Below are positions 5,206 through 61,241 of a stretch of DNA of 64,000 nucleotides, piece by piece. Numbering within the stretch: the stretch's first letter is position 1; the number at the start of each line of letters is the position of its first letter. The notes below the pieces were generated by a model. The model was given only the letters and a program-made list of their open reading frames with translations. It was not told where the DNA came from and ran no database searches. The stretch covers positions 33,542,001 to 33,606,000 of the forward strand of contig NC_042998.1 in the NCBI RefSeq assembly GCF_006345805.1, in the 5' to 3' direction. This DNA comes from Octopus sinensis. Taxonomy: Eukaryota. The position numbers were made by a program, and so were the translations under genes.

Positions 5206-5306
5206 AAGTAAATTTGTTGAAGTCGGCAGACAATAAAACAGTTACAGATTTGATAATCTGAGTGAAAAGTACCATAATTTTGGTACGTTTTAACAAGACA
5301 TGCTCT

Positions 5307-6958: not shown

Positions 6959-6977
6959 TATATATATATATATATAT

Positions 6978-7764
6978 AGCAATAATAATTCTCTAAATGA
7001 GATATAGACAGTGACTGCTCCATAACATAAGGGACATTAGCCAACTGAATATGGCTAGGGACAGGGCAGGGTGGTGGGGGTGTCACTGTTGCATTTAGCC
7101 CCAGGCGAACATCAACGTCACCAGATAGGCCGACGCCATCACGGCGTCCTCTATCTTGCAAAGGGAGATCATTCCCCAAGAAGCGGATGCCACATACGGA
7201 CCTAGGTTTCAAGGTGTATTGCCTATTATCAACGTATGGTAGGCACCGCCTCTCGACGAACAACTCACCGTGCAAGATATATATAAAGATTTTCAAGTAA
7301 ATACATTTACTGATTTCGAAAATCTGTTCGACAGCAATAATAATTCTCTAAATGAGATATAGACAGTGACTGCTCCATAACATAAGGGACATTAGCCAAC
7401 TGAATATGGCTAGGGACAGGGCAGGGTGGTGGGGGTGTCACTGTTGCATTTAGCCCCAGGCGAACAGATTTTCGAAATCAGTAAATGTATTTACTTGAAA
7501 ATCTTTATATATATCTTGCACGGTGAGTTGTTCGTCGAGAGGCGGTGCCTACCATACGTTGATAATAGGCAATACACCTTGAAACCTAGGTCCGTATGTG
7601 GCATCCGCTTCTTGGGGAATGATCTCCCTTTGCAAGATAGAGGACGCCGTGATGACGTCGGCCTATCTGGTGACGTTGATGTTCGCCTGGGGCTAAATGC
7701 AACAGTGACACCCCCACCACCCTGCCCTGTCCCTAGCCATATTCAGTTGGCTAATGTCCCTTAT

Positions 7765-7765
<1 letters not shown>
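6978..7765. repeat. Complex local duplication: direct 134 bp plus inverted 305 bp
   Basis: 6978-7111 = 7333-7466. 7461-7765 is the reverse complement of 7026-7330 (one mismatch seen). CGAACA microhomology at the switch. Confidence 0.9.
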
Positions 7766-7831
<66 letters not shown>

Positions 7832-8158
7832 ATGTAGGTAGGTAGGTAGGTTGGTAAGTAGGTAGGTAGGTAGGTAGGTAGGTAGGTAGGTGTATATATG
7901 TACATGCAATCCCGTGGTTTGATGCTCGGCGTCGTACCGCAGTGATACTTACCATAATTACCAACGAGCAATTAAAACCAACTCCATTCAAAACGGTGAG
8001 AGGCATAATCTCAGAGTTCAGGAATTCTTTGAAGTGACATGTCATCTAGAAAACATGAAGCTTCTCTTAATCTCCGTTTGGTAATTACGAAGCATCTCCA
8101 AGAGGCAGAGGTAATTGTAAGGAATCAAGAATTTGTTGTATGACATGGGATATATCTC

Positions 8159-8194
<36 letters not shown>

Positions 8195-8263
8195 TGTGTG
8201 TGTGAATGTGTGTGTGTATGTGTGTGTGTGGTGTATGTGTATATGTGAGTGGGTATGTATATG

Positions 8264-8298
<35 letters not shown>

Positions 8299-8343
8299 AG
8301 AAGAATATTACTAACGATTACTACGAAGTGGCATAGCATTACC

Positions 8344-8754
8344 AAGGCGGCGAGCTGGCAGAAACGTTAGCAAGCTGGGCGAAATGCTTAGCGGTATTTC
8401 GTCTGCGTTACGTTGTGAGTTCAAATTCCACCGAGGTCGACTTTGCCTTTCATCCTTTCGGGGTCGATAAAAGAAGTACCAGTTACGAACTGGGGTCGAT
8501 GTAATCGACTTAATACCTATGTCTGTCCTTGTTTGTTCCCTCTGTGTTTAGCCCCTTGTGGGTAATAAAGAAATAGGTATTTCGTCTGCCGCTACGTTCT
8601 GAGTTCAAATTCCGCCGAGATCGACTTTGCCTTTGATCCTTTCGGGGTCGATTAAATAAGTACCAGTTACGCACTGGGATATAATCGACTTAATCCGTTT
8701 GTCTATCCTTGTTTGTCCTAACTGTGTTTAGCCCCTTGTGGTAGTAAAGAAATA
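8344..8754 (+). mobile_element. SINE family C tandem dimer with 14-bp TSD
   Basis: One head and two bodies joined at GGTATTTCGTCTG, flanked by GGCATAGCATTACC at 8330-8343 and 8755-8768. Confidence 0.9.
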
Positions 8755-25948: not shown

Positions 25949-26187
25949 TAAAGTTCATGCAGATGGAAGGAAATGTTCTCGTATATACATTTATTTGTAT
26001 CGTTTTTACGTCCTGTTTGTATTACATTTTTTGTTCTTTCTTTGCGAAGTAATTTTATTTAATTCTCTCGCAGGAAGGGCTAGTTTGACGAGTCGTGTTC
26101 TGTCCTACCTTCGAAACACGCTGGAGTTGAACTAGGGACAGCAAATAAAGTTCATGCAGATGGAAGGAAATGTTCTCGTATATACAT
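25949..26187 (+). mobile_element. Penelope-like terminal fragment bounded by a 41-bp direct repeat
   Basis: AAAGTTCATGCAGATGGAAGGAAATGTTCTCGTATATACAT at both ends; interior matches the 6638/11050/18430 family. Confidence 0.55.
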
Positions 26188-26236
26188 ACATACATACATA
26201 CATACATACATACATACATACATACATACATACATA

Positions 26237-26750
26237 CCGTAAATCCTCGAGTATAATACGCATTTTTTTCCCAAAATTTAATGCTCAAAATCCCAAGTGC
26301 GTACTATATACGAGGTTAAAAATGAAAATTATTTTCTAAGCAATGTCCGAGTCTCTATTTGCTGTCCGGCAATGTTTATTCAGGCGCATTTTGTGATGTC
26401 GGGCGCTAAAATACTTTAAGCTAAGCCTGAAAGCAACGAAGTCATAAAAGAATCATCCATAACTTGCAGTAAGCAGCATTTATTAAACGTTATTACTGTT
26501 ATTTCTTTATTTTCTGCAAACAAAATGCACAAAAAAGCTACATGTTTGCATTATGTTATATATATACAATAATAATAAAGGACGTTACCGCATACATTTT
26601 TACAAACCAAGGACATTATATAGACCTCCTTGACTCAAGTTAGAGAAGGGGTGCGTACTATACACAAGGTTTAGGTTTTTCAGAGGTACAGCCCCCTAAA
26701 AATCCCCTGCGTATTATACTCAAGGGTGGACTATACTCGAAGATCTACGG
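26237..26750. mobile_element. pogo/Tigger-like (Tc1/mariner) MITE inserted at a TA in (CATA)n
   Basis: TA-CCGTAAATCCTCGAGTATA ... TATACTCGAAGATCTACGG-TA: TIRs with 2 mismatches and TA TSD. Confidence 0.8.
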
Positions 26751-26961
26751 TACATACATACATTACAAATACAATCTGTAAATGGAACAGTAAAACTCTG
26801 CAAGACTTTTCTTGAGTTTAAAATGTGACGTTGTTTTCGTTGTCTACGTTCCAGCAATGGAGCTTTGTATCTTTGTTAGAAACCAGCTTCTTCACCAGAG
26901 GGAGAATTTACATAATTTAAATCACAAGAGAACATACATACATACATACATACATACATAC

Positions 26962-27353
26962 GAGTGGCTGTGTGGTAAGTAGCTTGCTAACCAACCACAT
27001 GGTTCCGGGTTCAGTCCCACTGCGTGGCATCTTGGGCAAGTGTCTTCTGCTATAGCCCCGGGATGACCAATGCCTTGTGAGTGGATTTGGTAGACGGAAA
27101 CTGAAAGAAGCCTGTCGTATATATGTATATATATATATATAAGTGTGTGTGTATATGTTTGTGTGTCTGTGTTTGTCCCCCTAGCATTGCTTGACAACCG
27201 ATGCTGGTGTGTTTACGTCCCCGTCACTTAGAGGTTCGGCAAAAGAGACCGATAGAATAAGTACTGGGCTTACAAAGAATAAGTCCCGGGGTCGATTTGC
27301 TCGACTAAAGGCGGTGCTCCAGCATGGCCACAGTCAAATTACTGAAACAAGTA
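26962..27353 (+). mobile_element. SINE family B, young subfamily
   Basis: Near-identical to the copies at 41278, 60425 and 63333. Confidence 0.85.
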
Positions 27354-27412
27354 ATACATACATACATACATACATACATACATACATACATACATACATA
27401 CATACATACATA

Positions 27413-28579: not shown

Positions 28580-31050
28580 TATTTATATCACCCTCAAATG
28601 ATATCTTCTGTACCGGATCCCATTCTCATTAAACTTTTCCATCTTGTACGCTCAATCTCACTGAGAACTAAAAAGTATCCAACACAATCCAGAACGCTAC
28701 TACAACCCTGTTTTAAGAACCTCCAATCGTGACAAACACAAAAATCGCTTACATACCAAAAATGCAGTAGAACCAACAACGTCGTTCACCACAAACACTC
28801 TGTTGGAATATTTATCATTTACAAGTGTAAAGAAACAACTTTGGCTTTCTGGCTGTATTCACATTCCTCGCATTTGCTGTGTCTATCAACGGAACCTATT
28901 GGTAAACTGCAACAGTCGAAATAGTGAGAAAATATTAAGCTCCCTACAACACTCTCCCATATGACAAAAGTATTATAACCTAGGAATGAACAGTGTCATA
29001 TTCATAGAGGCATGATGTGTCTGAAGAAGTAAGAATTCGAAACATAACAATTTGATCAAGCGACAAATTACATTCAATTTTCTGGACGATTAAGGATAGC
29101 CGGCATTACAAATTAGAAACTCAATGTTTCCCTCTCTTCTAGTTTTCACTGGACTGTTTTTGAAATACACAACAGCGTGAGTCATAGCAGAGATGAGAAA
29201 CTTCTCTGCCCCTAACAACTACTTATTTATTATCCTATCTTATAGTATCTAAAAGATGACAGAGAGAGTGGTAAACCACAAATTTCTCTATCGTTTTGTG
29301 TCTTTCATTCCAGTGAACTCTTAAATTTCCATAAATCGAAATCAACTGGAAACCTACTTCGATGAAAGCGATGTTGTTGTCAAAAAGCTTACAATTTCTT
29401 CCACTGTCGTTCATAATAATGATAAGGTTTTGCTGACGTCCGTCACAGAAAGTGTCGTCTAAGCTCCTTCTTGCTCATATTCGCATTCTATTAAACCTGG
29501 GGTATCCCAAGCTTTGATCACTATCATTGCATTCATCCTACGCTATATCAAGAATCTGTCTCTAGTCAAACAGTCTTACCAGTTGTCCATAGACCTTTCA
29601 GTACTCAATATCTGCTGGGAAGCGTAGAACACACACAAGCTAGAGACCTCACTGCAGATATACACTAGTTATATGAGTCTCAACATTGAAAATATATTTC
29701 CAATGAGAATATAATCTAAACTCCATAAAGAACATTAAAACTCAGTCACGAGACTTCAAAATGTAACTGACTTTCATCACCTCACCGACGCTGATTTTGA
29801 TCCCCTCACAACTAAAACCATCACAAATCATTTAAATACTAAAGGCGGTGAGCTGACAGAAACGTTAAGCACGCTGGGCGAAATGCTTAGAGGTATTTCG
29901 TCTGTCTTTACGTTCTGAGTTCAAATTCCGCCGAGGTCGACTTTGCCTTTAATCCTTTCAGGGTCGATAAATTAAGTACCAGTTGTGTACTGGGGTCGAT
30001 CTAATCGACTGGTCCCCCTCCCCAAAATTTCGAGTCCTGTGCCTAGAGTAGAAAAGAAAAGATTATTCCCAATATCTGTAAAATGGAATAAAATACTCCT
30101 GACCACAGCAGTTATCAATAAAATAAATATTCTGCTAAATTTCATAGAAAGCGGTATTTCACAATTTTGACAGCGTCTTCCAAAACGTTTGCTGGTGTAT
30201 TATCACTTGCGATATGATTTCTACGAAATCAACGCTGCCATACACTTCAGATTTTCTATAATGATTCCGCTTTCTTACTGTCAGGCAATTCTTGACACAT
30301 TTCATACTACTTATCAAGATTTCACATCAATGATGTCAAGAGTAAATATTTCTGTATCCTGGTCAAGAATAACTTTTGCTATAAATGCCACTTGTATTCA
30401 ATGCAATCGTCATAATGATATGGCACCACCAAGAAAGGGCTGAACCATCTCGTTATCACAGATAGTTATTCAAAAGTCGACAATTGTTGAGAGAGCATTT
30501 AATAGTACCAATTGACTAATAACCTACCTCCGGTATGTATTTATTATTTATTTGACGAATTAGCTTTTGACGAAGTTTACTTCTACTCTGTCAGGTTAAA
30601 TTTCAAAGAACTGGGAGTGCACCGCTGGCTCTTATCAATAACCTTTACAACTGCTGTGCTGAAATGTCTGAAAAACAATCATATATTTGACTGCAGATAA
30701 CACAACATGGAACAATAACAACGTATCGTCCTGCAATATCGAGATACACACAGACACGGACACCTCACTAGCAATCCGTTCATATTGTCATGGAAATTAA
30801 CACAATATTTCACTCCCAAACCACCAGGCAGATGTGATACACGTAATACTTGTCAAGAAACTCAAGCCGCCCATGGGGAAACTTTACGTGACTGTCTCCG
30901 GAACGATGCATAGCAATGGAAAGAGAACATTAAAAGACTTCTGCTATTCTGGTAAATTATAATGTAAGGCTTCAAAACCAAATTGGACACATTCTCCAAA
31001 ATAAGATTGGTGGGGGATAGGACATATAACAGAATTGCATCAGTACAATC
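28580..31050 (+). mobile_element. Possible very old CR1-like LINE remnant
   Basis: Only weak motif echoes: VCIYYLFDELAFDEV (30512-30700) resembles the RT motif VIYLDFAKAFDKV, and GFKTKLDTF near 30965 resembles the CR1 C-terminus. Many stops. Confidence 0.3.
29840..30058 (+). mobile_element. SINE family C (alternative tail)
   Basis: Consensus match with GGTCCCCTCCCCAAAATTTCG tail. Confidence 0.8.
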
Positions 31051-31059
31051 AATGCCATA

Positions 31060-32642
31060 GATCCATCTGAGACACATCTGATGGAAACGTTCCAGATGTT
31101 TAAGGTGGTATCGATATGTGACCCACGTCTCGCAGACATAGAGAAGAGAAGGGAGCACACACGCCTTGTACACCTTTATCTTTGTCTTTCTGCATATGTC
31201 TTGCCGACTCCAGAGGTGCCTTTCTAGCCTTCCGAAAGCATCACTTGCTTTCTTAATTCTGCATGGAATTTTATTATCCAAATTGTTATATCTATTAACA
31301 GTGCTTCCCAGGTAGACAAACTGATCAACTACATCAAGTCGTTTACCATATATATAGATATTTGATTCACTATACTACTTACCAGGGGCGGGTTAGTACA
31401 TGACAACAGTTTTCTTGAGACTGACTGTCAATCCTACGACAATGCAAGCATCAGAGAATGCATTCAAAATGAGTTGCATATCAATCTCTGTGTGCGCTAC
31501 TAGATCACAATCATCTGCATACAAAAGGTCTCTTATGATAGAGGTAAATACCTTTGTTCTTGCAGCAAAGCGCCTGATACTAAATATGCTGCCAGAGGTT
31601 CGATAATGGATGTAAACACCATATCTGCAGTTTCTGAACGCAATACAGAAAACCATCGCAAAATATATGGCAAATAGGGTCGGTGCCAGAATATCCCCTT
31701 GTTTCACTCCATTTTGTATTGAGATAGGCTCCCATATTTTCCCTCTAACATTAACCCTACCCTTCATGTCTTCATCAAAAGACCTAACCAAAGGAAGGAA
31801 CTTTTCAGGACACCCAAGTTTCTGGAGGACATTCCACAGTGCATTTCTATTAACGGTATCAAGGGCTTTTGTCAGATCCACAAAAACCTGATTTAAATCC
31901 AGACCCTGTTACACACCCTTCTCTTGAAGCTGTCTAGCTGCAAAGGTCACATCAGCAATGCCGCGTCCCACACGAAAGCCAGATTGACTTTCTGGAAAAA
32001 CACAATCTGCAACGTGTTTCAGCAGACGATCCAGAAGTACCCTGCATAAAACCTTTCCTACGACAGAAAGCAATGATATTCCCCTATAGCTACCACAATC
32101 ATTCCTGTTGCCCTTTACCTTATATAAGACCACCATCACTGTATCTCTCCAGTTCTCAGGTACAGATTCACTAGCCCATATCATACCAAACAAAGAGTGA
32201 AGTTGCTGCAGAAGTTTCTCACCACCATGATGTAACAACTCCGCATGTATGCCATCCATACCCAGAGACTCCCCATTATTCATCCTTGAGACAGCCACTG
32301 CAACTTCTTCCAACTTTAGTGGTTCTGCGAGAGCTGCCTTCACAGGTAATTCGGGGATGAGATTGAGAACATCCTCACTAACTACAGACTACTGATTCAA
32401 AAGTTCATCAAAGTGTTCTTGCCACCTTCGCGGAATTGCTTGTGAATCACAAAGAAGTTCTTTACCATCCCTGCTTCGAAGTGGTGTCATCAGAGAAGTC
32501 GGTCCATAAACTTCTCACAAGAGACCATACAACAGATTTGTGTTATTGGAATCTGTATCTCATCAGCCTTCTTATTCCACCACGTATCCCTCATTTGAGA
32601 GAGCCTTCGCCTCACACGTGATTTCACATCTTTGAGTTCCCT
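31060..32642 (-). mobile_element. RTE-clade (BovB-like) LINE ORF2 fragment, reverse transcriptase domain, with stops and frameshifts
   Basis: ORFs 31909-32343, 31393-31881 and 30862-31281: YRGISLLSVVGKVL, PESQSGFR, DLTKALDTV, GVKQGDILAPTLF, LLYADDCDL, RIKKASDAFGRL, KIKVYKACVLPSLLY.CETW. Confidence 0.93.
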
Positions 32643-32719
32643 ATACATACATACATACATATATACATACATACATACATACATACATACATACATACAT
32701 ACATACATACTTACATACA

Positions 32720-33121
32720 TGTACCATCATAGAGGTCAGCTGCTCTGCAGATATAAATATCTTTTTGAAAATCAAAGAAAAAGAGGATATCTATGGAAAA
32801 CTGCTTCGAAACCTCCAGCTTCTATATCCAGACTATGAATTCATATTCATACCAATAGTAATTGGAGCATTAGGTTTTATTAGTGAATGCTTCAGGGAGA
32901 ATCTGGATTAACTGGGATTTTCAGAAAGAAAAATCGTCCGGCTGATTCGGGCATTACGAGTGCATACTGTGAGTGGAACAGTACAAATATGTAAGACTTT
33001 TTTCAAGTTCCAAATGTGAATTTGTCTGTGTTAACTACAGCCCATAGATGGAGCCTTGTATCATTGTCGGAAACCGGTTCCTTCCTCGGTGGAAGATTTA
33101 TAATAATTAAACAATAGAAGA
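32720..33121 (+). mobile_element. REL non-LTR retrotransposon 3' fragment in (CATA)n, copy 1
   Basis: CTIIEVSCSADINIFLKIKEKEDIYGKLLRNLQLLYPDYEFIFIPIVIGALG...GTVQICKTFFKFQM* (32720-33019, one premature stop): REL-type E-x-S-C..D and KE-K..Y motifs plus PIVIGALG. 3' end AGAC then (ATAC)n. Confidence 0.85.
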
Positions 33122-33179
33122 CATACATACATACAAACATGCATACATACATACAAACATGCATACATACATACATACA

Positions 33180-34193
33180 ATGATTTGGGATAGAGAAGAG
33201 AAACTCTGCACAGTTGTAGAAATTAACATAAAGCTGAAGATTAGTGAAAAAAAAGAACACCTATGCTGAACAATAGAGAAATCTGCAGTTACTCTACCCA
33301 GATTACAAGTTCAGGTTTATACCTGTAATTATGTAACACATTGCCTAAATACCAATCTTGAGAAATTTGGATTTCTCAAAACCAGAAAGGAGAAAACTAA
33401 TTTGAAGACTACATCAGATCCATCACTGGAACTGTAAAAATCTGTAAAACTTTCCAGAAGTTTATCATTTGAATATATATGCGTGTGTTTAGATATGCAA
33501 CTATATGCATAAGAATACATACATACATACATACATACATACATACATACATGCATACATACATACATACATACATACATACATACATGCATACATACAT
33601 GCATACATACATGCATGCATACATACATACATACATGCATGCATACATGCATACATACATACATGCATACATACATACATGCATGCATGCATGCATACAT
33701 ACATACATACATGCATGCATGCATGCATACATGCATGCATGCATGCATACATACATACATGCATACATATACATACATACATACATACATACATACATAC
33801 ATACATACATACATACATACATACATGCATACATACATGCATGCATACATACATACATACATACATACATACATACATACATGCATACATACATGCATAC
33901 ATACATACATACATGCATGCATACATACATACATACATGCATGCATGCATACATGCATGCATACATGCATACATACATACATACATACATACATACATAC
34001 ATGCATGCATACATACATACATACATACATACATACATGCATACATACATGCATACATACATACATACATACATACATACATGCATACATACATACATAC
34101 ATACATACATGCATACATACATGCATACATACATACATATATACATGCATGCATACATACATACATGCATACATACATACATACATACATACA

Positions 34194-34227
<34 letters not shown>

Positions 34228-34364
34228 CATACATATATACATACATACAAACAAACAAACAAAAATACCCTGTTGTTGATGTTGAAATTCCAATGAAGGA
34301 ACCTTGGATCTAGGTTAGAAACCGGTTCTTTTTTCCACTGGCAAGAAATAAACTGAATAAAGAC
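33180..34364 (+). mobile_element. REL retrotransposon 3' fragment, copy 2, 3'UTR split by an expanded (CATA)n
   Basis: MIWDREEKLCTVVEI...RNLQLLYPDYKFRFIPVI...GTVKICKTFQKFII* (stop 33470-33472). The UTR halves are joined as in the compact copy at 39208-39402. Confidence 0.8.
33516..34260. repeat. (CATA/CATG)n array, about 740 bp
   Basis: Direct reading. Confidence 0.95.
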
Positions 34365-34426
34365 ATACATACATACATACTACATACATACATACATACA
34401 TACATACATACATACATACATACATA

Positions 34427-34531
34427 CCTTGTTATTGATGTTGAAATTCCAATGGAGGAACCTTGGATCTAGGTTAGAAACCGGTTCCTTCTCTATTGGC
34501 AAGAAATCTTGAAATAAAACTAAATAAAGAC
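34427..34531 (+). mobile_element. REL retrotransposon extreme 3' end, copy 3
   Basis: Highly similar to 34266-34364; flanked on both sides by (CATA)n; ends AATAAAGAC-ATAC. Confidence 0.8.
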
Positions 34532-35321
34532 ATACATACCTACATGCTTCCTTTTTGTCTTACAAGTCTACAACTCATAGAATAGAAGACCTCAACGTGT
34601 AGGGATTTCGTGAAGGTCAAAACCATGCTTATCGTTTACACACTTAATCTGATCTCAAAATATAGGTTAGTAGGATTTCAACGTAGATTTATTTTGCGGT
34701 TTCATTTGTGTATTGAGATGATGGTTCAGTAAGCGCTTCATATATCGGGTTGCCACTCTCAACTTTGCCCTTTCTCATTCTTTTCTCTTCTCTTTCTCTA
34801 AATTTTCTTTCTTTTACTTCTTGTTTTTCTTTTCAGCCTACATTTTTTTTTCATTCTCCACCCGTCCCCCCCTATCCCAGATAATATTGTTTAATTAAAT
34901 TCTTCTGTATACAATCTATTCAATCTAAATCTGTGAAGTGATAAGTTGAGTCTACTGTTGACTGACAATGTACGTTAGCAATAGTATTGAAAGCTATTGT
35001 ATGTCAATATTTTGTATGAACGTAATTCTAGTATCCACTGTGTTGTGTTGCTCATGGTGAAAATAAATATTTCCATTCTCCATGAAGCGAAAAATTCACT
35101 AATGATTAACATTCATGAATTATTTATCAAATATTTTGTGTCTGATGGAGATAGGGGGCGCTCAGCTCCTAATGAAATCGTGCAGTAACTGTTACATGGC
35201 TCGTCTTGTATGTATTAAAAGTGGAGGAGCTCATCATTTTTCCGGTCTGGACACGGCAGATTTCTTCCAGAAAGAGACAAAACAAGACCGAGACAAATCG
35301 ATCTCCATATTTACTGCTACT

Positions 35322-35893
35322 AAGGCGGCGAGCTGGCAGAAGGGTTAACACGCCGAGGTCGACTTTGCCTTTCATCCTTTCGGTGTCGATAACTTAAGTA
35401 CCAGTTGCGTACTGAGGTCGGTCTAATCGACTGGCCCCCTCACCCAAAATTTCGGGCCTTGTGTCTAGAATAGAAACAAATATTTACAGGTACTAAGGCG
35501 GCGGCTGGCAGAAACGGTAGCACGCCGGGCAAAATGCTTAGCGGTATTTCGTCTGTCGTTACGTTCTGAGTTCAAATTCCGCCGAGGTCGACTTTGCCTT
35601 TCATCCTTTCGGGGGCGATTAAATAAGTACCAGTTGCGTACTGGTGTCGATGTAATCGATTTAATCCGTTTGTCTGTCCTTGTTTGTCTCCTCTGTGTTT
35701 AGCCCCTTGTGGGTAGTAAAGGAATGGGTATTTCGTCTATCTTTACGTTCTGAGTTCAAATTCCGTCGAGATCGACTTTGCCTTTGATCCTTTCGGGGTC
35801 AATAAATTAAGTACCAGTTGCGTACTGAGGTCGATCTAATTGACTGGCCCTCTCCCTCCAAAATTTCGGGCCTTGTGCCAAGAGCAGAAAAGA
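35322..35893 (+). mobile_element. SINE family C cluster (deleted monomer plus dimer)
   Basis: Consensus matches; dimer junction GGGTATTTCGTCT near 35727. Confidence 0.8.
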
Positions 35894-35997: not shown

Positions 35998-36605
35998 GGA
36001 TGGCGAGCTGGCAGAATCGTTTGCACGCCGGGCGAAATGCTTAGCGGTATTTCGTCTGCCGCTATGTTCTGAGTTCAAATTCCACCGAGGTCGACTTTGC
36101 CTTTCATCCTTTCGGGGTCGATAAAAGAAGTACCAGTTACGCACTGGGGTCGATATAATCGACTTAATCCGTTTGTCTGTCCTTGTTTGTCCTCTCTGTG
36201 TTTAGCTCCTTGTGGGTAGTAAAGAAATAGGTATTTCGTCTGCCGGTACGTTGTGAGTTAAAATTTCGCCGAGATCGACTTTGCTTTTCATCCTTTCGGG
36301 GTCAATTAAATTAAGTACCAGTTTCGCACTGGAGTCGATGTAATCGACTTAATCCGTTTGTCTGTCCTTGTTTGTCCTCTCTGTGTTTAGCCCCTTGTGG
36401 GTAGTAAAGAAATAGGTATTTCATCTGTCATTACGTTGTGAGTTCAAATTTCGCTGAGATCGACTTTGCCTTTCATCCTTTCGGGGTCAATTAAATTAAG
36501 TACCAGTTACGCACTGGAATCGATGTACTCGACTTAGTCCCTTTGACTGTCCTTGTTAGTTCCCTCTATGTTTAGCCCCCTGTGGGTAATAAAAAAATAA
36601 ATATA
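35998..36605 (+). mobile_element. SINE family C trimer (one head, three bodies, period about 185 bp)
   Basis: GGTATTTC junctions at about 36046, 36230 and 36415. Confidence 0.85.
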
Positions 36606-38878: not shown

Positions 38879-39207
38879 TCGCAAATGTCTGACGTACAAT
38901 CACGTGAAACTCACCGAGTAACAGTTTATGAAAACAGTTTTTCGACTTTAACAAATGGTATGAATTTAACACACTCACCGGTAAAGACTATTGAAAAGGT
39001 TGCCAGACGCAACGAAAATTTTAGGAAAATAAAAATAAGAAATAAGTGGAAATTTTACCGGTGAGTGTGTTAAATCATAAGGCACGAAAACAAAATGACT
39101 CTCCCGAGACACAACAGAATATGCTTCAACACACTAACTCACATAAAGAATCTTGCAAACCAAATCCAAAAACGAAATGGTGTGAATGTATGTATGTATT
39201 TATGTAT

Positions 39208-39402
39208 GTCATAATTCAGGTTTATTTTAAGATTTCTTGCCAATAGAGAAAGAGCAGGGTATTTTTGTATGTATGTATGTGTGTAAATTTGTATGTTTTG
39301 TTTTATGTATGTATTCTCATGCATATAGTTGCATATCTAGACATGCTCATATATATATTTAAATGATAAACTTCTGGAAAGTTTTACAGATTTTTACAGT
39401 AC
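39208..39402 (-). mobile_element. REL retrotransposon 3' end, copy 4, in (TATG)n
   Basis: Minus strand TVKICKTFQKFII* plus 3'UTR ending AATTATGAC-ATAC; microsatellite on both flanks. Confidence 0.85.
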
Positions 39403-39477
39403 GTATGTATGTATGTATGTATGTATGTATGTATGTATGTATGTATGTATGTATGTATGTATGTATGTATGTATGTA

Positions 39478-39508
<31 letters not shown>

Positions 39509-39997
39509 ATGTGTGTATGTATGTGTGTATGTGTATGTATGTATGTATGTATGTATGTATGTATGTATGTGTGTATGTATGTGTGTATGTATGTATGAAT
39601 GAATGTATGTATGTACGTAACTAAATAGGATTCGGGTGAAAAGCTTTTAGAATTCTATTCGAAGCTCAATGTAGCAGAGGTGTACAAATATGTACATATA
39701 TGTATATATACGTATATACATACGTATGTGTATATATATATGAATGTATGTATGCATGCATGTATGCAAATTAAATTGAGTAAATTAAACTGTGGAAACC
39801 TGTTAGACGGTTTGTACCAGTAATTTAATGGTACACGCTAGTCAGTTTACGTCATACTAATTCTTTCTAAGAATTATGTTAAGTGTCCACACGTCTGAGA
39901 AACACTCAACCACTTACACGCTAATTCATTGAACAGAAAATTCAGTTGATCGAACACTTGATCGTCGAAACATAGGGAAATCCATAATGAGTGTGAA

Positions 39998-42065: not shown

Positions 42066-43357
42066 ACACACACATACACATACACAAATATAATACGGAC
42101 TTCTTTCAGTTTCCGTCCACAAAAGCCACTCACAATGCTTTATTCGGTCCGAGGCTACATTTGCCCAAAGTGCCACACAGTGGGACTGAACCCGGAACCA
42201 TTTTGTTAGGAAGCAAACTTCTTACCACACAGCCACCCCTTTGCCTATATTTGTTGCATCATTAATCAACCAATCAAAATCCGCCACGTAGACAGCCAAT
42301 CCGTCGTTCTTGGTCATTAACTAACCTCATGTTTTCCACAATCTTCCACCGTATCCTTTCCTTAACATTGCTCAACCATTCCTCTTACGATATTCCTATG
42401 CATCTTCTGCCATGGGTTTGTCCATGCATGACACTAAACATATGGTGTTATGGTGGCATTATGCTCTATGACTACACCAAAACATTCTCAAAGCATTTTA
42501 ACAACTAACGGGAAATTTTCGTGGTTTACAATTCTCCGAAACTTCTCAACAAATGGCAGAAATAAAATATTAAAATCTCACCACAGTTTACTTCCATTCT
42601 ATGGTGCACATCAATCAAGCTAAATATTATATACCTATTTTAATCTGATTTAATTAGATTATTAAGATCATAGACGTGATATCTCGCTACTTCACTGCGC
42701 TTGACATTTCTATTTTGGTCTAATGACATTCTTAAAATGCAATAAAGTAACAGGCTAATGATGTAGGAGAATTGGGCAAAGAAACTAGTCATTCAGACTT
42801 TGTTATTGATTTAGAGGATAGCTCATACCATGAAAGTGAAACTGGGGTACAAATACACAAGCCCAGTATACCCATCATGACAACTTGTCTGATAAGAGTA
42901 CAACAGGCACATGCATCGCAACCATATGTGCACGACATGGTGATTTCATATCAAGATAAACCGTACATGACCTTGCAGATGGGGCCCTGTTAGAATTTTC
43001 TTCAAGTTAAGTAGCCCATCCCGCTCAAAAGGTCCCTGAATAAAGTTTGTTTAAGGATGTTGAACGAAACATACAGATTTTCCAGAGGAGAATTTCCTCT
43101 AGACATAGGGCTATGATGCTCCTTCACTACTTCTACCCGTGATCAGAGATGTACATTTCGTCAGCCATCAAAGGACATGCTCAACTGGTTATGGTCAAAC
43201 AAGTGACAAGCATATCTGTTGTATTGGGCAGAAAATCTGCTGTAGTCCATCTTTTATACCAAGACAAGACATACATGATGGCACTTCCGATCAGTTGAGT
43301 GAGATCAGAAGCCATGATAGACAGTGCCTAGTACTGTATATTATTATTATTATTATT

Positions 43358-43714
43358 CAGTAGTTTTATTTTTATAGCGTGCTTTCACTTCACTACCGAG
43401 CGCAGCTCTGTGTGCCTTGGGTATGTGCTGTGATTTGTTGTGATGCTCTGATAGTTATTGTATGGAAAGTGTTCTGCGTAGGATGTGTGCAGTGCCTAGC
43501 AGTGCAATTTTCTGTATGTTATATGTGTTTGTAAGTCCTGGTGTTTTTGTTATGTATTTGTCTGAATATTTTTTTATCATGCCTAATGCACCTACTATGA
43601 TAGGAATTGTTTCTGTTTTCAGATTCCACATTCTAGTTACCTTTATTTCCAGGTCTTTGTATTTTGAGAGTTTCTCCATTTCTTTTAGAGACACGTTGTC
43701 ATCTGCCGGTATTG

Positions 43715-43716
<2 letters not shown>
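43358..43716 (-). mobile_element. R4/Dong-like REL retrotransposon 3' fragment 1
   Basis: SIPADDNVSLKEMEKLSKYKDLEIKVTRMWNLKTETIPIIVGALG...IQKIALLGTAHILRRTLSIQ*; (TAA)n on both sides. Confidence 0.88.
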
Positions 43717-43809
<93 letters not shown>

Positions 43810-44082
43810 TTGGTTTGTCTTATTCTTGGTAGGGATTATGTGGTTATGTGCCTGTAACCCTAAGTATCCACGAATTTCAAGCACTTAGGACCCTCCTTAT
43901 AATCCTTACTGTCCCTAAGAGACAAACTTTCTATAGGAGCTCCACCGGGTATTTTATGTCAATCTCCTTCAGCTATTTGTCTATACCTCGCTTCATTGTT
44001 CCCAACTCACCAATTATTATAAGCACGACTTCTACTGTTCGCATGCTCTAAATTCTACCTATTTCAAATTTTAAGGGATTGC
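43810..44082 (-). mobile_element. R4/Dong-like REL 3' fragment 2 (different family)
   Basis: NPLKFEIGRI*SMRTVEVVLIIIGELGT...KVCLLGTVRIIRRVLSA*; distinct 3'UTR; (TAA)n on both sides. Confidence 0.8.
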
Positions 44083-44100
44083 ATTATTATTATTATTATA

Positions 44101-44326
44101 TGAAAACTCACGGCTTATGTTGCTAGGTATGATGGATAGTGTCAGCTGTTCACAGCCAGCTGATTAAGGTGACATTTGTTTACTGGTCATGCTTCAAGAA
44201 CTCTGCGAAGAATTCTTGCAGCTCCAAGCAATGCTGATTTTTGTAGGTGTTCTACCTTCACACTTGCACCAATCTTTTTCAGCCATGTTGATAGCTGAGT
44301 GCTTTTCAGCCACGCTGGTAGTTGAC
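44101..44326 (-). mobile_element. R4/Dong-like REL 3' fragment 3 (different family)
   Basis: STWLKKIGASVKVEHLQKSALLGAARILRRVLEA*; third distinct 3'UTR, followed by (TAA)n. Confidence 0.8.
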
Positions 44327-44327
44327 T

Positions 44328-44399
<72 letters not shown>

Positions 44400-44550
44400 G
44401 TTGTTGTTATTATCATCATCATCATCATTATTATTATTATTATTATTATCACTATTATTATTATTATTATTACTATTATTATTTTTATTATTTTTATTAT
44501 TATTATTATTATTATTATTTTTGTTATTATCATCATCATCATCATCATCA

Positions 44551-44581
<31 letters not shown>

Positions 44582-44622
44582 TATTATTACTATTATTATT
44601 ATTATTATTTTTATTTTTATTA

Positions 44623-44692
<70 letters not shown>

Positions 44693-44831
44693 GTTGTTAT
44701 TATCATCATCATCATCATCATTATTATTATTATTATTAATATTATTATTATTTTTGTTATTATTATTATTATCATTGTTGTTGTTGTTGTTGTTGCTGTT
44801 GTTGTTGCTGTTGTTGTTGTTGTTGTTGTAG

Positions 44832-44878
<47 letters not shown>

Positions 44879-44880
44879 AT
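44327..44880. repeat. Compound trinucleotide array (TCT/TAT/CAT/TGT)
   Basis: Direct reading. Confidence 0.95.
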
Positions 44881-45707
44881 TAAAACACTTTAAGGAACAA
44901 AATGCTTTACGTCACATCTCAAGTGACTGCTGACCTGAAAGCAATCGTAGTCCAATAAGTGTTTCGTTAAGTAATTTGGCTTTTCCCCTTTGAAGTGCTA
45001 AGAACAATATATACTACATAGATATTTTTTGTTTTGCGAGAGGTGTATGCGTTTGTGCGTGCGTTTGTGTGTGCGTTTGTGTGTGTGTGTGTGTTTGTGT
45101 GTGTGTGATCCTCACTCTGAGAGTTTGAGTGTATGAGTACATGTGTGTTTGTGTGTGCTTGTGTGCCTGTGTTCGTGAGAAATAGACAGATAGAAAGTGA
45201 AAAAGAAGGAAAGAAATTGAAAAGAAATAATGAATGAATGAAATGTGAGTGAGTATTTGTGTTCAAGTTATGTTATCTCTGTTCCTAAAAAAAGATTGAG
45301 TCTGTACTTGTTCACGTCTCTATGTTTGTCTAATTGTGCATTCAAGTACAAGATTCCATATTAGTCTTAAGATGTTTTTTCTTGCCTTTGTTTATTTTGT
45401 TTTCTTTTAATATTTTTTTTTCGAGTGGGAGTTCATAATTTCTTCACAAGCTACGTTGCCTTTATAAAACTTGGTATTTGGGGGGGGGGCTAGACTCATT
45501 TATGTTTTGCGGAGGAAAACGGGTGAATTTTCTCTTGGATTAACGACCAATATTTTTCGAAGACCATTCCCAAGAGATATTTCCGGCAACTATAATAGAA
45601 GAAAATGATCTGACCAAAGAAAAAAAAAGAAAAAAGAAAAAAAGTTTTATGTTAACAAGTAAACTTATACCATTTTAATTCGCATATTTTGCAGTTCTTG
45701 AGAAAGG

Positions 45708-58071: not shown

Positions 58072-60424
58072 TCGGACATAAAACTTTGTTCGTCGTCGTC
58101 ACGGTTGTGGTTGCTTTTTAAGTGCAGGTCTTCTTTCATTGAGAAGACCCACAATCAAAGATGTTCCAGTCATAACCGTCCCATCTTTTCGTTTTTGTCT
58201 TTTTTTTTTCTTTTTCATTTTTCAAAATGTACCAAGGATTACAGTATACAAAAATGTCTTGACAGACTTCAAAGACCGTATGTTGTATTTTGAAAAAAAT
58301 GTCTGGCTGCAATTTGAAGAAGGTCGAGGAACTATGCAAGGGGGTAGGATAGGGGTTCTTTTTATTTATTGTCTCTTCCATTAACATGCGTGGGGCTTTT
58401 ATGAAATAGAATCTGCTAGTAAATACCACTGCAATACGAGGAAGACAGAGAATCACTGTAGTAGAACCGAATGGATCCACATTTATTTTCAGAAATAGTA
58501 CAAAGTGGAGTAAATGGCACTATATGTTTGGAATGGCAGAATGGAAAGTTCTGTAAAGCAGACGACACTTTAATGGTAATAATCTGACAATGAGTTCTTC
58601 CTGCATTGTTGTGGCTGCCTGGATATTCTATATTTACTTTCGATAGATTTCACGTATAATAGCACGACTCCAAAGTGTATGAACGTCATTTCAAGGATTC
58701 CAACAATATGGAAGAGAACATACATCAAGTACCAAAAATCAGAGAAAGGGTGAAGGTGAAAGAGAGAGAGAAAGAATGGGAGGGAGAGAGAGAGGGAGAG
58801 AGAGAGAGAGCTGAAGCAACAAAATGAAGAAATAATATGGTACAAACTGAATTTTAGTTGTTAATTACAACTTTTTGAAGGAGGACAAAGAAATGTAAAA
58901 ACAATTGTTTCATCCTCTTAGACATAAAACACAGATTACATCCATTTATGAAATTTCTTTTATGGAAATAATTTCCGCAACTTGCCAGCCACAATCTTAC
59001 CATGTTGACAGAACTATTTCTTGTTTATTGCGCACAAAACTTGCCTCTTTGATCTGTCCGTCAAATCACACAAGACCAGAGGCGGTTTCTGTTTTTTTTT
59101 TTTTTTTTCATTCTTTTTCTTTTTTCTTTTCTTTCTTTCCAGTATGCATTTCGCATTGTTCGACCACCTCGAATACCTTGATCATATGTCTGTTTAATCA
59201 GGGTTAAACCGATTATTTAAATCTAAGGTTAAGCAACAACAAAAACAGTAACAACCATACCCAGCTAAGAAGTCACTGCTTCATATCCGGTCACCGACCT
59301 ACTATGTCGTGTCTGTGGCTGAGACACTTAACACTCAACGAACGAGTCCACCTTGCTTTAAAGTAGACACTTCAGAATGCGAGGGCGTGCAGTCTACTGC
59401 AATAAGTAGAGACTCCACTGTAAAACTGACATGTGGGTCGTTACTTGACAGTTCGCTTTAATTTTGTCGCAGATAAACCTCTCATAGACATTGACTCAGG
59501 AACGAAATTTGCTTAGGGGGTGCAAACCCAGCCCCAAAATTTTTACAAATTAGGTCATGCTTTTTTTATGTTCTTTGTTCTTTGAGAAGAAACCTAATTC
59601 AAGTTACTTTTTACAGATCGCATTCTACTCACTGTTTTCTAAACCTGAGAAAGGTAAGAAGGGGGTGCAAATTTTTATTTTGCACCCCACAACAAATTTA
59701 GGGGGGCCCTGGCATTCCTTGCACCTCATGTTTCCGGGACCATGCTCATTACACTACGGCCATACTAGAGCATCACCTTGAGGGAATTTAGTTGAATAAT
59801 TCGACCCCAGTACTTACACTTTTTAAGCCTGTTACTTATTCTATTGGTCTTTATGCCGAACCGCTAAGTTACGGGCATATAAGCTCACCAACACCGGTTG
59901 TTAAGCGATGGGGAGTGGGGCAAACGGAGACACACACACACAAATACATACATACATACATGCATACATACATACATGCATACGTACATACATACATACA
60001 TACATACATACATACATACATACATACATACATGCATACATACATACATACATGCACACAGACACACACATGCACACACACGCACACAAAGACGAAGACA
60101 ACACGCAAGTTTAATAGTTTGACGCTCGGGAGAAATGGAAAAGTCTTTTACATTTCGAGCCTACGCTCTTCAACACAAAGGAATCAGAGAAAATAAACAG
60201 GGGATGAAATAAAAAAATTGTTGAATTCAGTAAATTCAATAAACAAAAAGGTAAAAAGAAGAAAAAAAAAAAAAAACGTGAGGACGTAGCACAAGCAATG
60301 GACTTTCCTGTTTTTCGTGATTCCGACAAAGAGCTATGCTCGAAATGTAAAACAACATCTCTCTTCTATGAATTCATAGTCTGGATATAGAAGCTAGAGG
60401 TTTCGAAGCAGTTGTCCATAGATA

Positions 60425-60825
60425 GGTGCAGGAGTGGCTTGCTAACCAACCACATGGTTCCCGGTTCAGTCCCACTGCATGGCATCTTGGGCAAGTGTCT
60501 TCTGTTATAGCCCCGGGCCGACCAATGCCTTGTGAGTGGATTTGGTAGACGGAAACTGAAAGAAGCCTGTCGTATATATGTATATATATATAAATGTATG
60601 TGTGTGTGTGTGTTTGTGTGTCTGTGTTTGCCCCCCTAGCATTGCTTGACAACCGATGCTGGTGTGTTTACGTCCCCGTCACTTAGCGGTTCGGCAAAAG
60701 AGACCGATAGAATAAGTACTGGGCTTACAAAGAATAAGTCCCGGGGTCGATTTGCTCGACTAAAGGCGGTGCTCCAGCATGGCCACAGTCAAATGACTGA
60801 AACAAGTAAAAGAGTAAAGAGTAAA
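60425..60825 (+). mobile_element. SINE family B, young subfamily
   Basis: Consensus match with a short head deletion. Confidence 0.85.
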
Positions 60826-61019
60826 GAGATATCCTCTTTTTCTTTGATTTTCAAAGAGATATTTATATCTGCAGAGCAGCTGACCACTAGAACGTACATA
60901 CCTCTGCCCTTCTGTCCCAAACTACAATATCCAGCCTGTTGTGCTTACATTTGACAGAAGTTTTGATGGAAATATTCCCCCAGTATTCCTTGAGTAGTTG
61001 TTTTATGTATGTATGTATG

Positions 61020-61241
61020 TATGTATCTTTTATTTTACTTGTTTCAGTCAACTGCGGCCATGCTAAAGCACCGCCTTTTAGTCGAACAAATCGACCCCCG
61101 GACTTATTCTTTGTAAACCTGGTTCTTAATCTATATATCGCTTCTGCTGAACCGCTAAGTTACGGGAAAGTAAACAAACCAACATCGGTTGTCAAGCGAT
61201 GATGAGGGGAAACACAGACATAAACACACACGCACACACAC

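What the first reader, a model, noticed from the sequence alone, without database searches (positions are those of the whole stretch)
32642..34545. Candidate (CATA)n-microsatellite-specific REL retrotransposon family, stacked co-directionally
Seen: three 5'-truncated fragments (32720-33121, 33180-34364, 34427-34531) all lie on the + strand. Each begins inside a (CATA)n run and ends at the same junction, GAC|ATACATAC. Two encode diverged versions of one REL endonuclease C-terminus (IIEVSCSAD...KEKEDIY...PIVIGALG...GTVxICKTF). A fourth copy at 39208-39402 lies on the - strand and has the same geometry in (TATG)n. Established: REL-encoding non-LTR elements (R2, R4/Dong, NeSL) are often sequence-specific, and Dong targets (TAA)n. 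Inference: this lineage targets (CATA)n, a specificity I do not recall being described, and repeatedly re-targets its own flanks.
Basis: partly seen in the sequence, partly recalled or inferred. Interest (0 to 1): 0.8.

Follow-up and report, generated by a model that had tools for sequence, protein, structure and literature searches.

The report
CATA-repeat-targeting Dong-like retrotransposon fragments
These are dead, 5'-truncated copies of a jumping gene (a non-LTR retrotransposon with a restriction-like endonuclease) that inserts, always in one orientation, into (CATA)n simple repeats; this is a new repeat target for a known kind of repeat-targeting element, not a new kind of element.

Summary
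Fragments A (32720-33122), B (33180-34364) and C (34427-34531) on the + strand, and D (39208-39402) on the - strand, are related. They are truncated at different 5' points and end at GAC|ATAC in (CATA)n. I found two more copies: E (26763-26933, +) and F (60367-61004, -).

The encoded C-terminus is a CCHC knuckle plus an R2-type restriction-like endonuclease. The AF2 model has pLDDT 92.6, and its best Foldseek matches are the R2 endonuclease domains (TM 0.72). Relatives carry a reverse transcriptase, no N-terminal zinc finger and a small N-terminal three-helix domain. That is the published R4/Dong architecture.

Target specificity is supported:
- All four unambiguous 5' junctions in the window abut (CATA)n in the sense orientation.
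- Seven full-length relatives from other assemblies have (ACAT)n on both sides, three of them in long-read contigs.
- Co-directional stacks recur in those other assemblies.
- A sister lineage is flanked by (ACTT)n instead.
- The same window holds a classical (TAA)n stack of a more distant relative.
- A 3'UTR hairpin is conserved with compensatory changes.

Microsatellite-targeting elements of this type (Dong, some HERO families, Togen) are known, and Waldo (a different endonuclease type) targets ACAY repeats. I found no paper that describes (ACAT)n for this type. Verdict: new member of a known kind, moderate interest.

The parts
32643..32719 (+). (CATA)n array upstream of copy A. It is the remnant of the target array. 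Its left neighbour is an unrelated minus-strand LINE fragment.
32720..33122 (+). Copy A. It is 5'-truncated just after the PD motif. Its ORF remnant (32720-33019) reads IIEVSCSAD..KEKEDIY..PIVIGALG..GTVQICKTF with one internal stop. It has a 3'UTR and ends GAC|ATAC.
   Evidence: 66% identity to P0001 over 99 aa
33050..33081 (+). Conserved 3'UTR hairpin motif (CCUUG, 5 bp, loop, 5 bp, CCGG) in copy A, partly decayed.
33123..33179 (+). (ACAT)n between A and B. It is both the 3' flank of A and the 5' flank of B.
33180..34364 (+). Copy B, of a second subfamily. It is 5'-truncated inside the RPDIVVWD codons and its ORF has decayed. It carries an internal 3'UTR microsatellite at 33515-34261 and a hairpin at 34298-34329, and ends GAC|ATAC.
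34365..34426 (+). (ACAT)n between B and C.
34427..34531 (+). Copy C, 3'UTR only, with a hairpin at 34457-34488, ending GAC|ATAC. It is followed by about 14 nt of repeat and then unique DNA. Its 5' junction is ambiguous because it falls where the subfamily's internal microsatellite ends.
39208..39402 (-). Copy D, same subfamily as B and C. It is 5'-truncated at the GTVKICKTF codons and has a short internal ACAT run and a deletion that removes the hairpin. On its own strand it is preceded by the array 39403-39619 and followed by the array 39186-39207.
26763..26933 (+). Copy E, A-type and 71% identical to A. It is 5'-truncated at the QIQSVNGTVK codons, has a hairpin at 26859-26890 and ends GAAC|ATAC. 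Its 5' array (26180-26238 plus 26753-26762) is split by a TIR element. Its 3' array (26934-26961 plus 27347-27412) is split by a SINE.
60367..61004 (-). Copy F, 93-96% identical to A. It reaches furthest 5' (..KHNRLDIVVWD..), is interrupted by a SINE (about 60425-60827) and is cut off at 60367. On its own strand it is preceded by (ATAC)5, then a SINE, then (CATA)7.

Best explanation
The block is a pile-up of dead, 5'-truncated copies of a non-LTR retrotransposon family that integrates specifically, and in one orientation, into (CATA)n microsatellites.

The intact element, seen only in relatives, is about 4 kb with one ORF. It encodes a small N-terminal three-helix (Myb/SANT-like) domain without zinc fingers, a reverse transcriptase, a CCHC knuckle and an R2-type restriction-like endonuclease. 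This is the R4/Dong-type architecture.

Inferred mechanism is target-primed reverse transcription:
1. The endonuclease nicks the (TATG)n strand of an array.
2. The freed 3'-OH primes cDNA synthesis at the 3' end of the element RNA. That end is held by the protein through a conserved 3'UTR hairpin, and probably carries a few AUAC units that can pair with the target.
3. Incomplete reverse transcription gives 5'-truncated copies.

Each insertion leaves repeat on both sides, and recognition is strand-specific. New copies therefore land next to old ones in the same orientation, which produces the co-directional stack.

What reads the repeat is unresolved. By analogy with R2 I favour the N-terminal domain (roughly 55%) over pairing of the RNA tail with the target (roughly 30%). 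Both may contribute.
For: SHOWN IN THE WINDOW
- Six related copies are truncated at six different 5' points. Five of five preserved 3' ends run into (ATAC)n at (G/A)AC|ATAC. All four unambiguous 5' ends abut (CATA)n in the sense orientation.
- Only about 1% of positions would do this by chance.
- 9 of 11 SINE heads do not touch such arrays.

SHOWN FOR THE PROTEIN
- P0001 is 68% identical to the A+F composite.
- 1,910 relatives were found. The long ones carry RVT_1 plus the same C-terminus.
- A profile of the C-terminus aligns to the CCHC and KPDL motifs of R2 (E = 1e-3).
- The AF2 model has pLDDT 92.6. Its best Foldseek matches are the R2Tg, R2Pm and R2Bm endonuclease domains (E = 1e-6, TM 0.72).
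- Nine full-length relatives have no N-terminal C2H2 motif and a single CCHC.
- The N-terminus is predicted as three helices.

SHOWN IN OTHER GENOMES
- Full-length relatives L003, L004, L008, L009, L006, L013 and L015 have (ACAT)n on both sides. L006, L013 and L015 are in long-read contigs with unique DNA beyond the arrays.
- L005, L012 and L014 have (ACAT)n at the 3' end.
- Co-directional stacks separated by the repeat recur in L013 and L015.
- A sister lineage (L007, L010) is flanked in the same way by (ACTT)n.

RNA SIGNAL
- A 3'UTR hairpin 40-70 nt from the 3' end has 7 of 7 pairs with compensatory changes. 91.7% of cells are paired, against 23-37% in the slid controls, and 0 of 500 shuffles reach the observed value.

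ESTABLISHED KNOWLEDGE
- R4/Dong elements have RT plus a REL endonuclease, a diverged N-terminal Myb, no zinc fingers, and insert into rDNA or microsatellites (PMC7998251).
Against: - No intact copy, empty site or polymorphic insertion was seen. Cleavage and priming are inferred, not shown.
- The window holds only a handful of copies. Two 5' junctions (C and F) are ambiguous because the element carries internal ACAT runs.
- The short-read contigs L003, L004, L008 and L009 could be collapsed tandem arrays rather than single insertions.
- One relative (L014) has no array within about 700 bp upstream of its ORF.
- Two SINEs and a TIR element also sit inside these arrays, so the arrays attract other insertions as well.
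- The N-terminal fold match to Myb domains is not significant (E > 1), and Pfam finds nothing there.
- Placement in the R4/Dong clade rests on architecture and on homology to a (TAA)n-associated relative. It does not rest on an RT phylogeny with reference sequences.
- I derived the hairpin by eye from these same sequences.
Confidence: 0.8

Rival explanations
1. Tail only. The element merely ends in a (CATA)n tail, as many LINEs end in simple repeats, and integrates at random. The upstream arrays are coincidence or the tails of neighbouring copies.
For: Every copy has the repeat at its 3' end. B and C are preceded by the 3' arrays of A and B. The 5' junctions of C and F can be explained by internal ACAT runs.
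Against: A, D and E are preceded by arrays whose far sides are unrelated DNA; the chance is about 0.01 per site. Full-length elements in long-read contigs (L006, L013, L015) have 80-260 bp of the repeat upstream of their 5' ends with unique DNA beyond. Random integration would not stack copies co-directionally in three different genomes.
Confidence: 0.05
2. Passive accumulation. (CATA)n arrays are fragile or tolerant sites that collect insertions of many elements, and this family has no recognition of its own. This is the explanation proposed for Drosophila Waldo-A/B near CA repeats.
For: Two SINE copies and a TIR element lie inside the same arrays. Arrays make up 3.35% of the window. PMC3812793 describes such passive accumulation for Waldo-A/B.
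Against: The orientation is always sense. The 3' junctions are base-precise ((G/A)AC|ATAC). 9 of 11 SINE heads lie outside arrays, whereas all unambiguous junctions of this family are inside them. Relatives in other genomes show the same flanks at 40-63% protein identity. A sister lineage is tied to a different repeat, (ACTT)n, which a generic hot spot would not explain.
Confidence: 0.07
3. Local duplication. The stack arose by tandem duplication or unequal crossing-over within a long microsatellite, not by repeated insertion.
For: TRF reports a 159-bp period, 2.1 copies and 84% matches over 34211-34545, which is the 3' end of B plus C. Microsatellites promote slippage and unequal exchange.
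Against: A and B belong to different subfamilies with different 3'UTRs and different truncation points. D, E and F are at separate loci, two of them on the other strand. Stacks of different subfamilies occur in L013 and L015. At most this explains C.
Confidence: 0.05
4. Same behaviour, different clade. The family belongs to HERO (some families are reported to be microsatellite-specific) or to a NeSL/Togen-like group, not to R4/Dong.
For: PMC4640811 reports microsatellite-specific HERO families and (TG)n-specific Togen. I could not obtain reference sequences for an RT phylogeny. The octopus repeat census lists Hero families too (PMC13282606).
Against: The architecture matches the published R4/Dong description: no N-terminal zinc finger and a diverged N-terminal helical domain (PMC7998251). 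NeSL/Utopia have 1-3 N-terminal zinc fingers (PMC4640811). The C-terminus is homologous (hhalign 95.6%, E = 1e-8) to a (TAA)n-stacked element in the same window, and (TAA)n is the hallmark Dong target.
Confidence: 0.25

Closest known systems
Dong (Bombyx mori) and Dong-like elements of the R4/Dong clade (DongAg, DongBg and others)
   Same: Single-ORF non-LTR element with RT, CCHC and a C-terminal restriction-like endonuclease. No N-terminal zinc fingers, and a diverged N-terminal helical (Myb/SANT-like) domain. Oriented insertion into a microsatellite, with the repeat on both sides. 5'-truncated copies. (PMC7998251, PMC3812793.)
   Different: [quoted passage not shown] This family sits in (CATA)n and a sister lineage in (ACTT)n. 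A separate, more distant (TAA)n-associated relative coexists in the same window. Clade membership by RT phylogeny was not tested.
Microsatellite-specific HERO families (leech; Kapitonov & Jurka 2014, cited in PMC4640811) and Togen, (TG)n-specific and NeSL-related
   Same: Non-LTR elements with a restriction-like endonuclease that target simple repeats.
   Different: They are different clades by RT phylogeny according to PMC4640811. The motifs targeted by the HERO families were not available to me. Togen targets a dinucleotide repeat.
Waldo (WaldoAg1/2, WaldoFs1; R1 clade)
   Same: Sequence-specific insertion into ACAY microsatellites, a class that includes ACAT (PMC3812793).
   Different: Waldo uses an N-terminal apurinic/apyrimidinic-type endonuclease. 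This family has a C-terminal restriction-like endonuclease and no APE domain. The shared target is therefore convergent.
R2 (28S rDNA-specific; R2Bm, R2Tg)
   Same: Closest solved structures for both the RT (E = 1e-24) and the endonuclease domain (TM 0.72). The mechanistic model comes from R2: target-primed reverse transcription, recognition of a 3'UTR RNA, and target choice by an N-terminal DNA-binding domain.
   Different: R2 has N-terminal zinc finger(s) plus Myb and targets one site in 28S rDNA. This family has no zinc finger and targets a tetranucleotide repeat.

Membership tests
Non-LTR retrotransposons with a restriction-like endonuclease (R2/R4/NeSL/HERO/CRE group) | Reverse transcriptase domain in the same ORF | tested here: met
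   The window copies are too truncated to hold it. The relatives P0002 (61% identical to P0001), P0152, P0156, P0041 and P0105 carry RVT_1 upstream of the same C-terminus. The best PDB matches are R2 proteins.
Non-LTR retrotransposons with a restriction-like endonuclease (R2/R4/NeSL/HERO/CRE group) | CCHC motif followed by a PD-(D/E)xK restriction-like endonuclease, C-terminal to the RT | tested here: met
   CRLC..H....C, then RPDIVVWD, IIEV and K..Y. The profile aligns to the CCHC and KPDL motifs of R2. The AF2 model has pLDDT 92.6, and Foldseek's best hits are R2 endonuclease domains (E = 1e-6, TM 0.72). Window copies keep IIEV/KEKE (A), and F has RLDIVVWD (P to L).
Non-LTR retrotransposons with a restriction-like endonuclease (R2/R4/NeSL/HERO/CRE group) | No APE endonuclease, no LTRs or TIRs, frequent 5' truncation | tested here: met
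   RVT_1 is the only significant Pfam domain in full-length relatives. Six window copies are truncated at six different points.
R4/Dong clade | No N-terminal zinc fingers, and a diverged Myb/SANT-like domain near the N-terminus (PMC7998251) | tested here: inconclusive
   No C2H2-like motif in nine full-length relatives. A conserved N-terminal block (W..EL..D...G..KR.K.LWD..HP) is predicted as three helices with pLDDT 75. Myb domains are among the top Foldseek hits but E > 1, and Pfam is silent.
R4/Dong clade | Site-specific insertion into rDNA or a microsatellite | tested here: met
   (CATA)n on both sides, in the sense orientation, in the window and in seven full-length relatives.
R4/Dong clade | RT domain groups with R4, Dong and Rex6 in a phylogeny | not testable with these tools
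   No reference sequences of Dong, R4, HERO or NeSL could be fetched. Indirect support only: the C-terminus is homologous (hhalign 95.6%, E = 1e-8) to a (TAA)n-stacked element in this window.
Dong proper | (TAA)n as the target | tested here: not met
   The target is (CATA)n. The (TAA)n arrays of the window (43341-44900) hold a different, more distant family.
Waldo (R1 clade, ACAY-specific) | APE-type endonuclease N-terminal to the RT | tested here: not met
   There is no APE domain, and the endonuclease is C-terminal and restriction-like.
NeSL/Utopia | One to three zinc fingers at the N-terminus (PMC4640811) | tested here: not met
   No N-terminal C2H2 motif in nine full-length relatives.
HERO clade | RT phylogeny with HERO references | not testable with these tools
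   No reference sequences were available.

The most novel reading that the evidence does not exclude
The window has sampled an old and widespread sub-clade of Dong-like retrotransposons that, as far as I could find, is undescribed. It is specialised on tetranucleotide microsatellites and shows at least one natural switch of target, (ACAT)n to (ACTT)n. It coexists with a (TAA)n-specific relative in one genome. If so, this is a natural series of closely related site-specific integration machines that differ in the short repeat they read. It could be used to work out how the N-terminal helical domain, the endonuclease and the RNA 3' tail share the job of target choice.
Probability: 0.4. Interest if true: 0.55.

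Novelty: new member of a known kind. Interest (0 to 1): 0.4.

Why it matters
- Annotation. It explains part of the (CATA)n load of this region and why short 'unclassified' repeats sit between the arrays. Such fragments should be annotated as Dong-like LINE 3' ends.
- Biology. It adds tetranucleotide targets, (ACAT)n and in a sister lineage (ACTT)n, to the repertoire of retrotransposons with a restriction-like endonuclease. It also shows that two or three repeat-specific lineages can partition the microsatellites of one genome.
- Tools. R2-type proteins are being developed for site-specific DNA insertion (PMC13580325, PMC13586686). Related proteins with different simple targets, together with a compact conserved 3'UTR hairpin, make a convenient system for asking what sets target choice.

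None of this changes the picture of how such elements work.

Tried and rejected
- Pfam on the window's endonuclease fragment gave only noise. A single-sequence PDB search with P0001 also gave only noise. A profile and a structure model were needed.
- Pfam on the N-terminal domain found nothing. Foldseek on its model was not significant.
- Rfam on six relatives' loci gave no hit, so there is no recognisable 5' ribozyme of the kind R2 has.
- I tested whether the whole block was inserted into the minus-strand LINE at 30862-32642, which would have meant a non-repeat first target. The right flank 34546-35500 shows no continuation of that ORF and no second copy exists in the window, so this could not be decided.
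- The look-up of the more distant relative P0105 gave a contig without informative ends. P0028 was not on record. An outgroup target such as (TAA)n could therefore not be read from them.
- The host species could not be established with the tools. The SINE looks like the octopus SINE to me from memory only.
- No paper in the library mentions an (ACAT)n or (CATA)n target for an element with a restriction-like endonuclease. Repbase and Dfam could not be consulted.
Full report
WHAT IS THERE

The region 32642-34545 consists of three stretches of unique sequence separated by (CATA)n arrays.

- Copy A (32720-33122) translates in one frame to IIEVSCSADINIFLKIKEKEDIYGKLLRNLQLLYPDYEFIFIPIVIGALGFISECFRENLD*LGFSERKIVRLIRALRVHTVSGTVQICKTFFKFQM*. 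A 100-nt 3'UTR follows, ending GAAGAC|ATAC.
- Copy B (33180-34364) starts about ten codons further upstream, in the codons for ..IVVWD... Its ORF is decayed by deletions and stops.
- In B, a 750-bp (ACAT/GCAT)n block (33515-34261) lies between the stop codon and the last 100 nt.
- Copy D on the other strand (39208-39402) has the same layout with only a few repeat units at that place.
- Copy C (34427-34531) is the last 105 nt of the same subfamily, 82-83% identical to B.

BLAST of these pieces against the window, and tblastn with relatives, revealed two more copies.

- Copy E (26763-26933, +) is 71% identical to A.
- Copy F (60367-61004, -) is 93-96% identical to A. It reaches furthest 5' (..KHNRLDIVVWDRRAEV..), is split by a SINE and has lost its 3' part.

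JUNCTIONS

All five preserved 3' ends (A-E) run into (ATAC)n at (G/A)AC|ATAC. All six copies are preceded by the repeat in the sense orientation.

Two of those 5' junctions are not informative, because the element itself carries ACAT runs there. C starts exactly where the internal 3'UTR microsatellite ends. F starts near a coding stretch that in the relative L001 reads gaaTACATACATACAcat, which encodes EYIHT.

The other four (A, B, D, E) are truncated in ordinary coding sequence and still abut the repeat. For A, D and E the far side of the array is unrelated DNA.

Only about 1% of window positions are preceded by 12 nt of this repeat in a given orientation. As a control, 9 of 11 heads and 11 of 13 tails of the abundant SINE do not touch such arrays. 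The two SINE copies that do are inserted into the arrays next to E and F (Fisher 4/4 against 2/11, p = 0.011).

WHAT THE PROTEIN IS

The A+F composite finds P0001 (176 aa, 68% identity), which reads CCHC .. YLPxRH .. RPDIVVWD .. IEVSCPAD .. KxxxY .. PIIIGALG .. GTVKICKTF. An exhaustive HMMER search with P0001 gives 1,910 relatives. The long ones (P0002, P0041, P0105 and others) carry RVT_1 upstream of this C-terminus.

Full-length relatives (P0152, 1133 aa; P0156, 1083 aa) match R2 proteins best among solved structures (for P0041). A profile of the C-terminal domain aligns to the CCHC and KPDL motifs of R2. Its AlphaFold model (pLDDT 92.6) superposes on the endonuclease domains of R2Tg, the turtle R2 and R2Bm (Foldseek E = 1e-6 to 6e-4, TM 0.63-0.73). 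The restriction-like endonuclease assignment is therefore confirmed.

Nine full-length relatives have no N-terminal C2H2 motif and a single CCHC. They share an N-terminal block (W..EL..D...G..KR.K.LWD..HP) predicted as three helices. Myb domains are among its nearest folds, but not significantly.

This architecture is what Schön et al. describe for R4/Dong: RT plus REL endonuclease, a highly diverged N-terminal Myb/SANT domain, no zinc fingers, and insertion into rDNA or microsatellites (PMC7998251).

DOES IT TARGET (CATA)n?

Evidence from outside the window says yes.

- Contigs L003 and L009 (P0152 type) and L004 and L008 (P0156 type) come from independent ENA and JGI samples. They hold apparently complete elements with a shared 5' end (CGCAG..AGGACGTGTGGATTAYCGCTCT) and (CATA)n at both ends.
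- Those are short-read contigs and could be collapsed tandems. Three long-read contigs remove that doubt. L006 has an element at about 4765-8672, with 260 bp of compound ACAT/CCAT repeat upstream and 92 bp downstream. L013 has an element at about 4707-8325. L015 has an element at about 2819-7725. Each has the repeat on both sides and unique DNA beyond.
- L005, L012 and L014 show the repeat at the 3' end. L014 has none near its 5' end.
- These relatives are only 40-63% identical to P0002 in protein, so the habit is old.
- L013 and L015 contain further, diverged, co-directional copies separated by the same repeat. The stack in the window is therefore the normal appearance of this clade.
- L007 and L010 (49-51% identity to P0002) are flanked by (ACTT)n instead, again with co-directional neighbours. 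In a rough neighbour-joining tree of the C-terminal domain they nest inside the ACAT-associated sequences.

AN INTERNAL COMPARATOR

tblastn also hit 43449-43715 on the minus strand. That locus (about 43341-44340) is a stack of three co-directional 5'-truncated 3' fragments of a more distant element with a restriction-like endonuclease, embedded in (TAA)n. All (TTA) runs of four or more units in the window lie there.

Its C-terminus (..IPADDNVSLKEMEKLSKYKDLEIKVTRMWN..IPIIVGALG..LLGTAHILRR..) is homologous to the CATA family profile (hhalign 95.6%, E = 1e-8). (TAA)n is the published Dong target (PMC3812793, PMC7998251). This ties the CATA family to Dong-like elements. It also shows that the same genome hosts lineages specialised on different repeats.

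RNA SIGNAL

The 3'UTRs are otherwise unalignable across the clade. They share a 24-nt motif 40-70 nt from the 3' end: CCUUG, a 5-bp stem, a 5-nt loop (UUGUU), the other half of the stem, then CCGG.

- On 12 sequences all 7 proposed pairs show changes on both sides, for example CUAUA/UAUAG, CUGUA/UACAG, UCCCA/UGGGA, UUCUA/UAGAA and AUCUC/GAGAU.
- 91.7% of cells are paired, against 23-37% for slid partners.
- No shuffle out of 500 reaches the observed values.
- I derived the structure by eye from these sequences, which favours it somewhat. The compensatory changes are still hard to explain otherwise.
- By analogy with 3'UTR recognition in R2, this is the likely handle by which the protein picks its own RNA.
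- The window copies A, B, C and E carry it in partly decayed form (33050-33081, 34298-34329, 34457-34488, 26859-26890). D has it deleted.

MECHANISM

Shown:
- the anatomy;
- the oriented repeat flanks on both sides;
- the domain content of relatives;
- the conserved hairpin.

Inferred from the R2 paradigm:
- a nick in the (TATG)n strand;
- priming on the RNA 3' end;
- 5' truncation by incomplete reverse transcription;
- regeneration of target on both sides of each insert, giving co-directional stacks.

What reads the repeat is unresolved. It may be the N-terminal helical domain, as in R2 and as proposed for Dong in PMC7998251. It may be pairing between terminal AUAC units of the RNA and the nicked target. 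The second route would make switches such as ACAT to ACTT easy.

WHAT IS KNOWN

Microsatellite-specific non-LTR elements are well documented:
- Dong, (TAA)n;
- Kibi, (TC)n;
- Koshi, (TTC)n;
- Mino, (AC)n;
- Waldo, (ACAY)n (all from PMC3812793);
- some HERO families, and Togen, (TG)n (PMC4640811).

Waldo shares the target class but has an APE endonuclease. Octopus genomes are reported to hold abundant 'Dong-R4' LINEs (PMC13282606, PMC9115989), with no target stated. Whether the window is from an octopus I can only suggest from memory of its SINE.

I found no paper in the library that reports (ACAT)n or (ACTT)n as the target of an element with a restriction-like endonuclease. Repbase and Dfam notes could not be checked.

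VERDICT

The thing itself is a new member, with a new repeat target, of a known kind of element. All window copies are dead fragments. Interest is moderate (0.4). The most interesting aspect is the set of related lineages with different simple-repeat targets, not the stack itself.

Noticed in passing
window 43341-44900, minus strand: A second stack with the same geometry but a different repeat and a more distant family. Three co-directional 5'-truncated LINE 3' fragments with a restriction-like endonuclease (about 44340-44099, 44083-43808 and 43715-43356) are separated by (AAT)n, downstream of a long compound (TAA)n tract. This is the classical Dong-type (TAA)n association. All (TTA) runs of four or more units in the window lie here.
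   Followed up: partly
L007 4387-10895; L010 1-56: Relatives at 49-51% protein identity to P0002 are flanked by (ACTT)n instead of (ACAT)n, again with co-directional neighbours. This points to a switch of microsatellite target within the clade.
   Followed up: partly
window 26962-27346 (+) and 61051-61536 (-): Two copies of the abundant ~385-bp SINE lie inside the (ACAT)n arrays next to copies E and F. They run directly into the repeat and lack most or all of the family's usual (AAAGAGTA)-type tail. Eleven of the 13 SINE tails, including the copy at 60433-60801 that splits F, have the usual tail and no ACAT flanks. Either these are chance hits in arrays, or these two were mobilised differently.
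   Followed up: partly
window 26235-26752: A ~515-bp non-autonomous element with 21-nt terminal inverted repeats (TACCGTAAATCCTCGAGTATA / its complement, 90% match) is inserted into the (ACAT)n array upstream of copy E.
   Followed up: partly
window 30862-32642, minus strand: An unrelated LINE fragment with an RT ORF (..FVDLTKALDTV..YADD..) has its 5' end exactly at the (CATA)n array that precedes copy A. I could not tell whether it is 5'-truncated there or was interrupted by the array.
   Followed up: partly
window 33515-34261: The internal 3'UTR microsatellite of copy B has grown to about 750 bp and is a mosaic of ACAT and GCAT units. The same position in copy D holds only a few units. This is a case of in-situ expansion of a repeat carried inside a transposon.
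   Followed up: no
window 36046-36599: A 185-bp tandem repeat, 3 copies at 90% identity, that appears to be built from part of a tRNA-like SINE (..GGGGTCAATTAAATTAAGTACCAGTTACGCACTGGAGTCGATGTAATCGACT..).
   Followed up: no
window 3371-3688 and 4160-4238, minus orientation: Two (ACAT)n arrays about 800 bp apart are each followed by the same sequence (GCATGCATGCA.C.TGGGACAAAATAATGGAAACG). This looks like a local duplication or another repeat family that begins at ACAT arrays. No similarity to the family studied here was detected.
   Followed up: no
L001 240-262: The coding sequence of the closest relative contains TACATACATACA (EYIHT), a three-unit copy of the element's own target motif. It lies near the point where window copy F is truncated, so it may act as a microhomology for 5' joining.
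   Followed up: no
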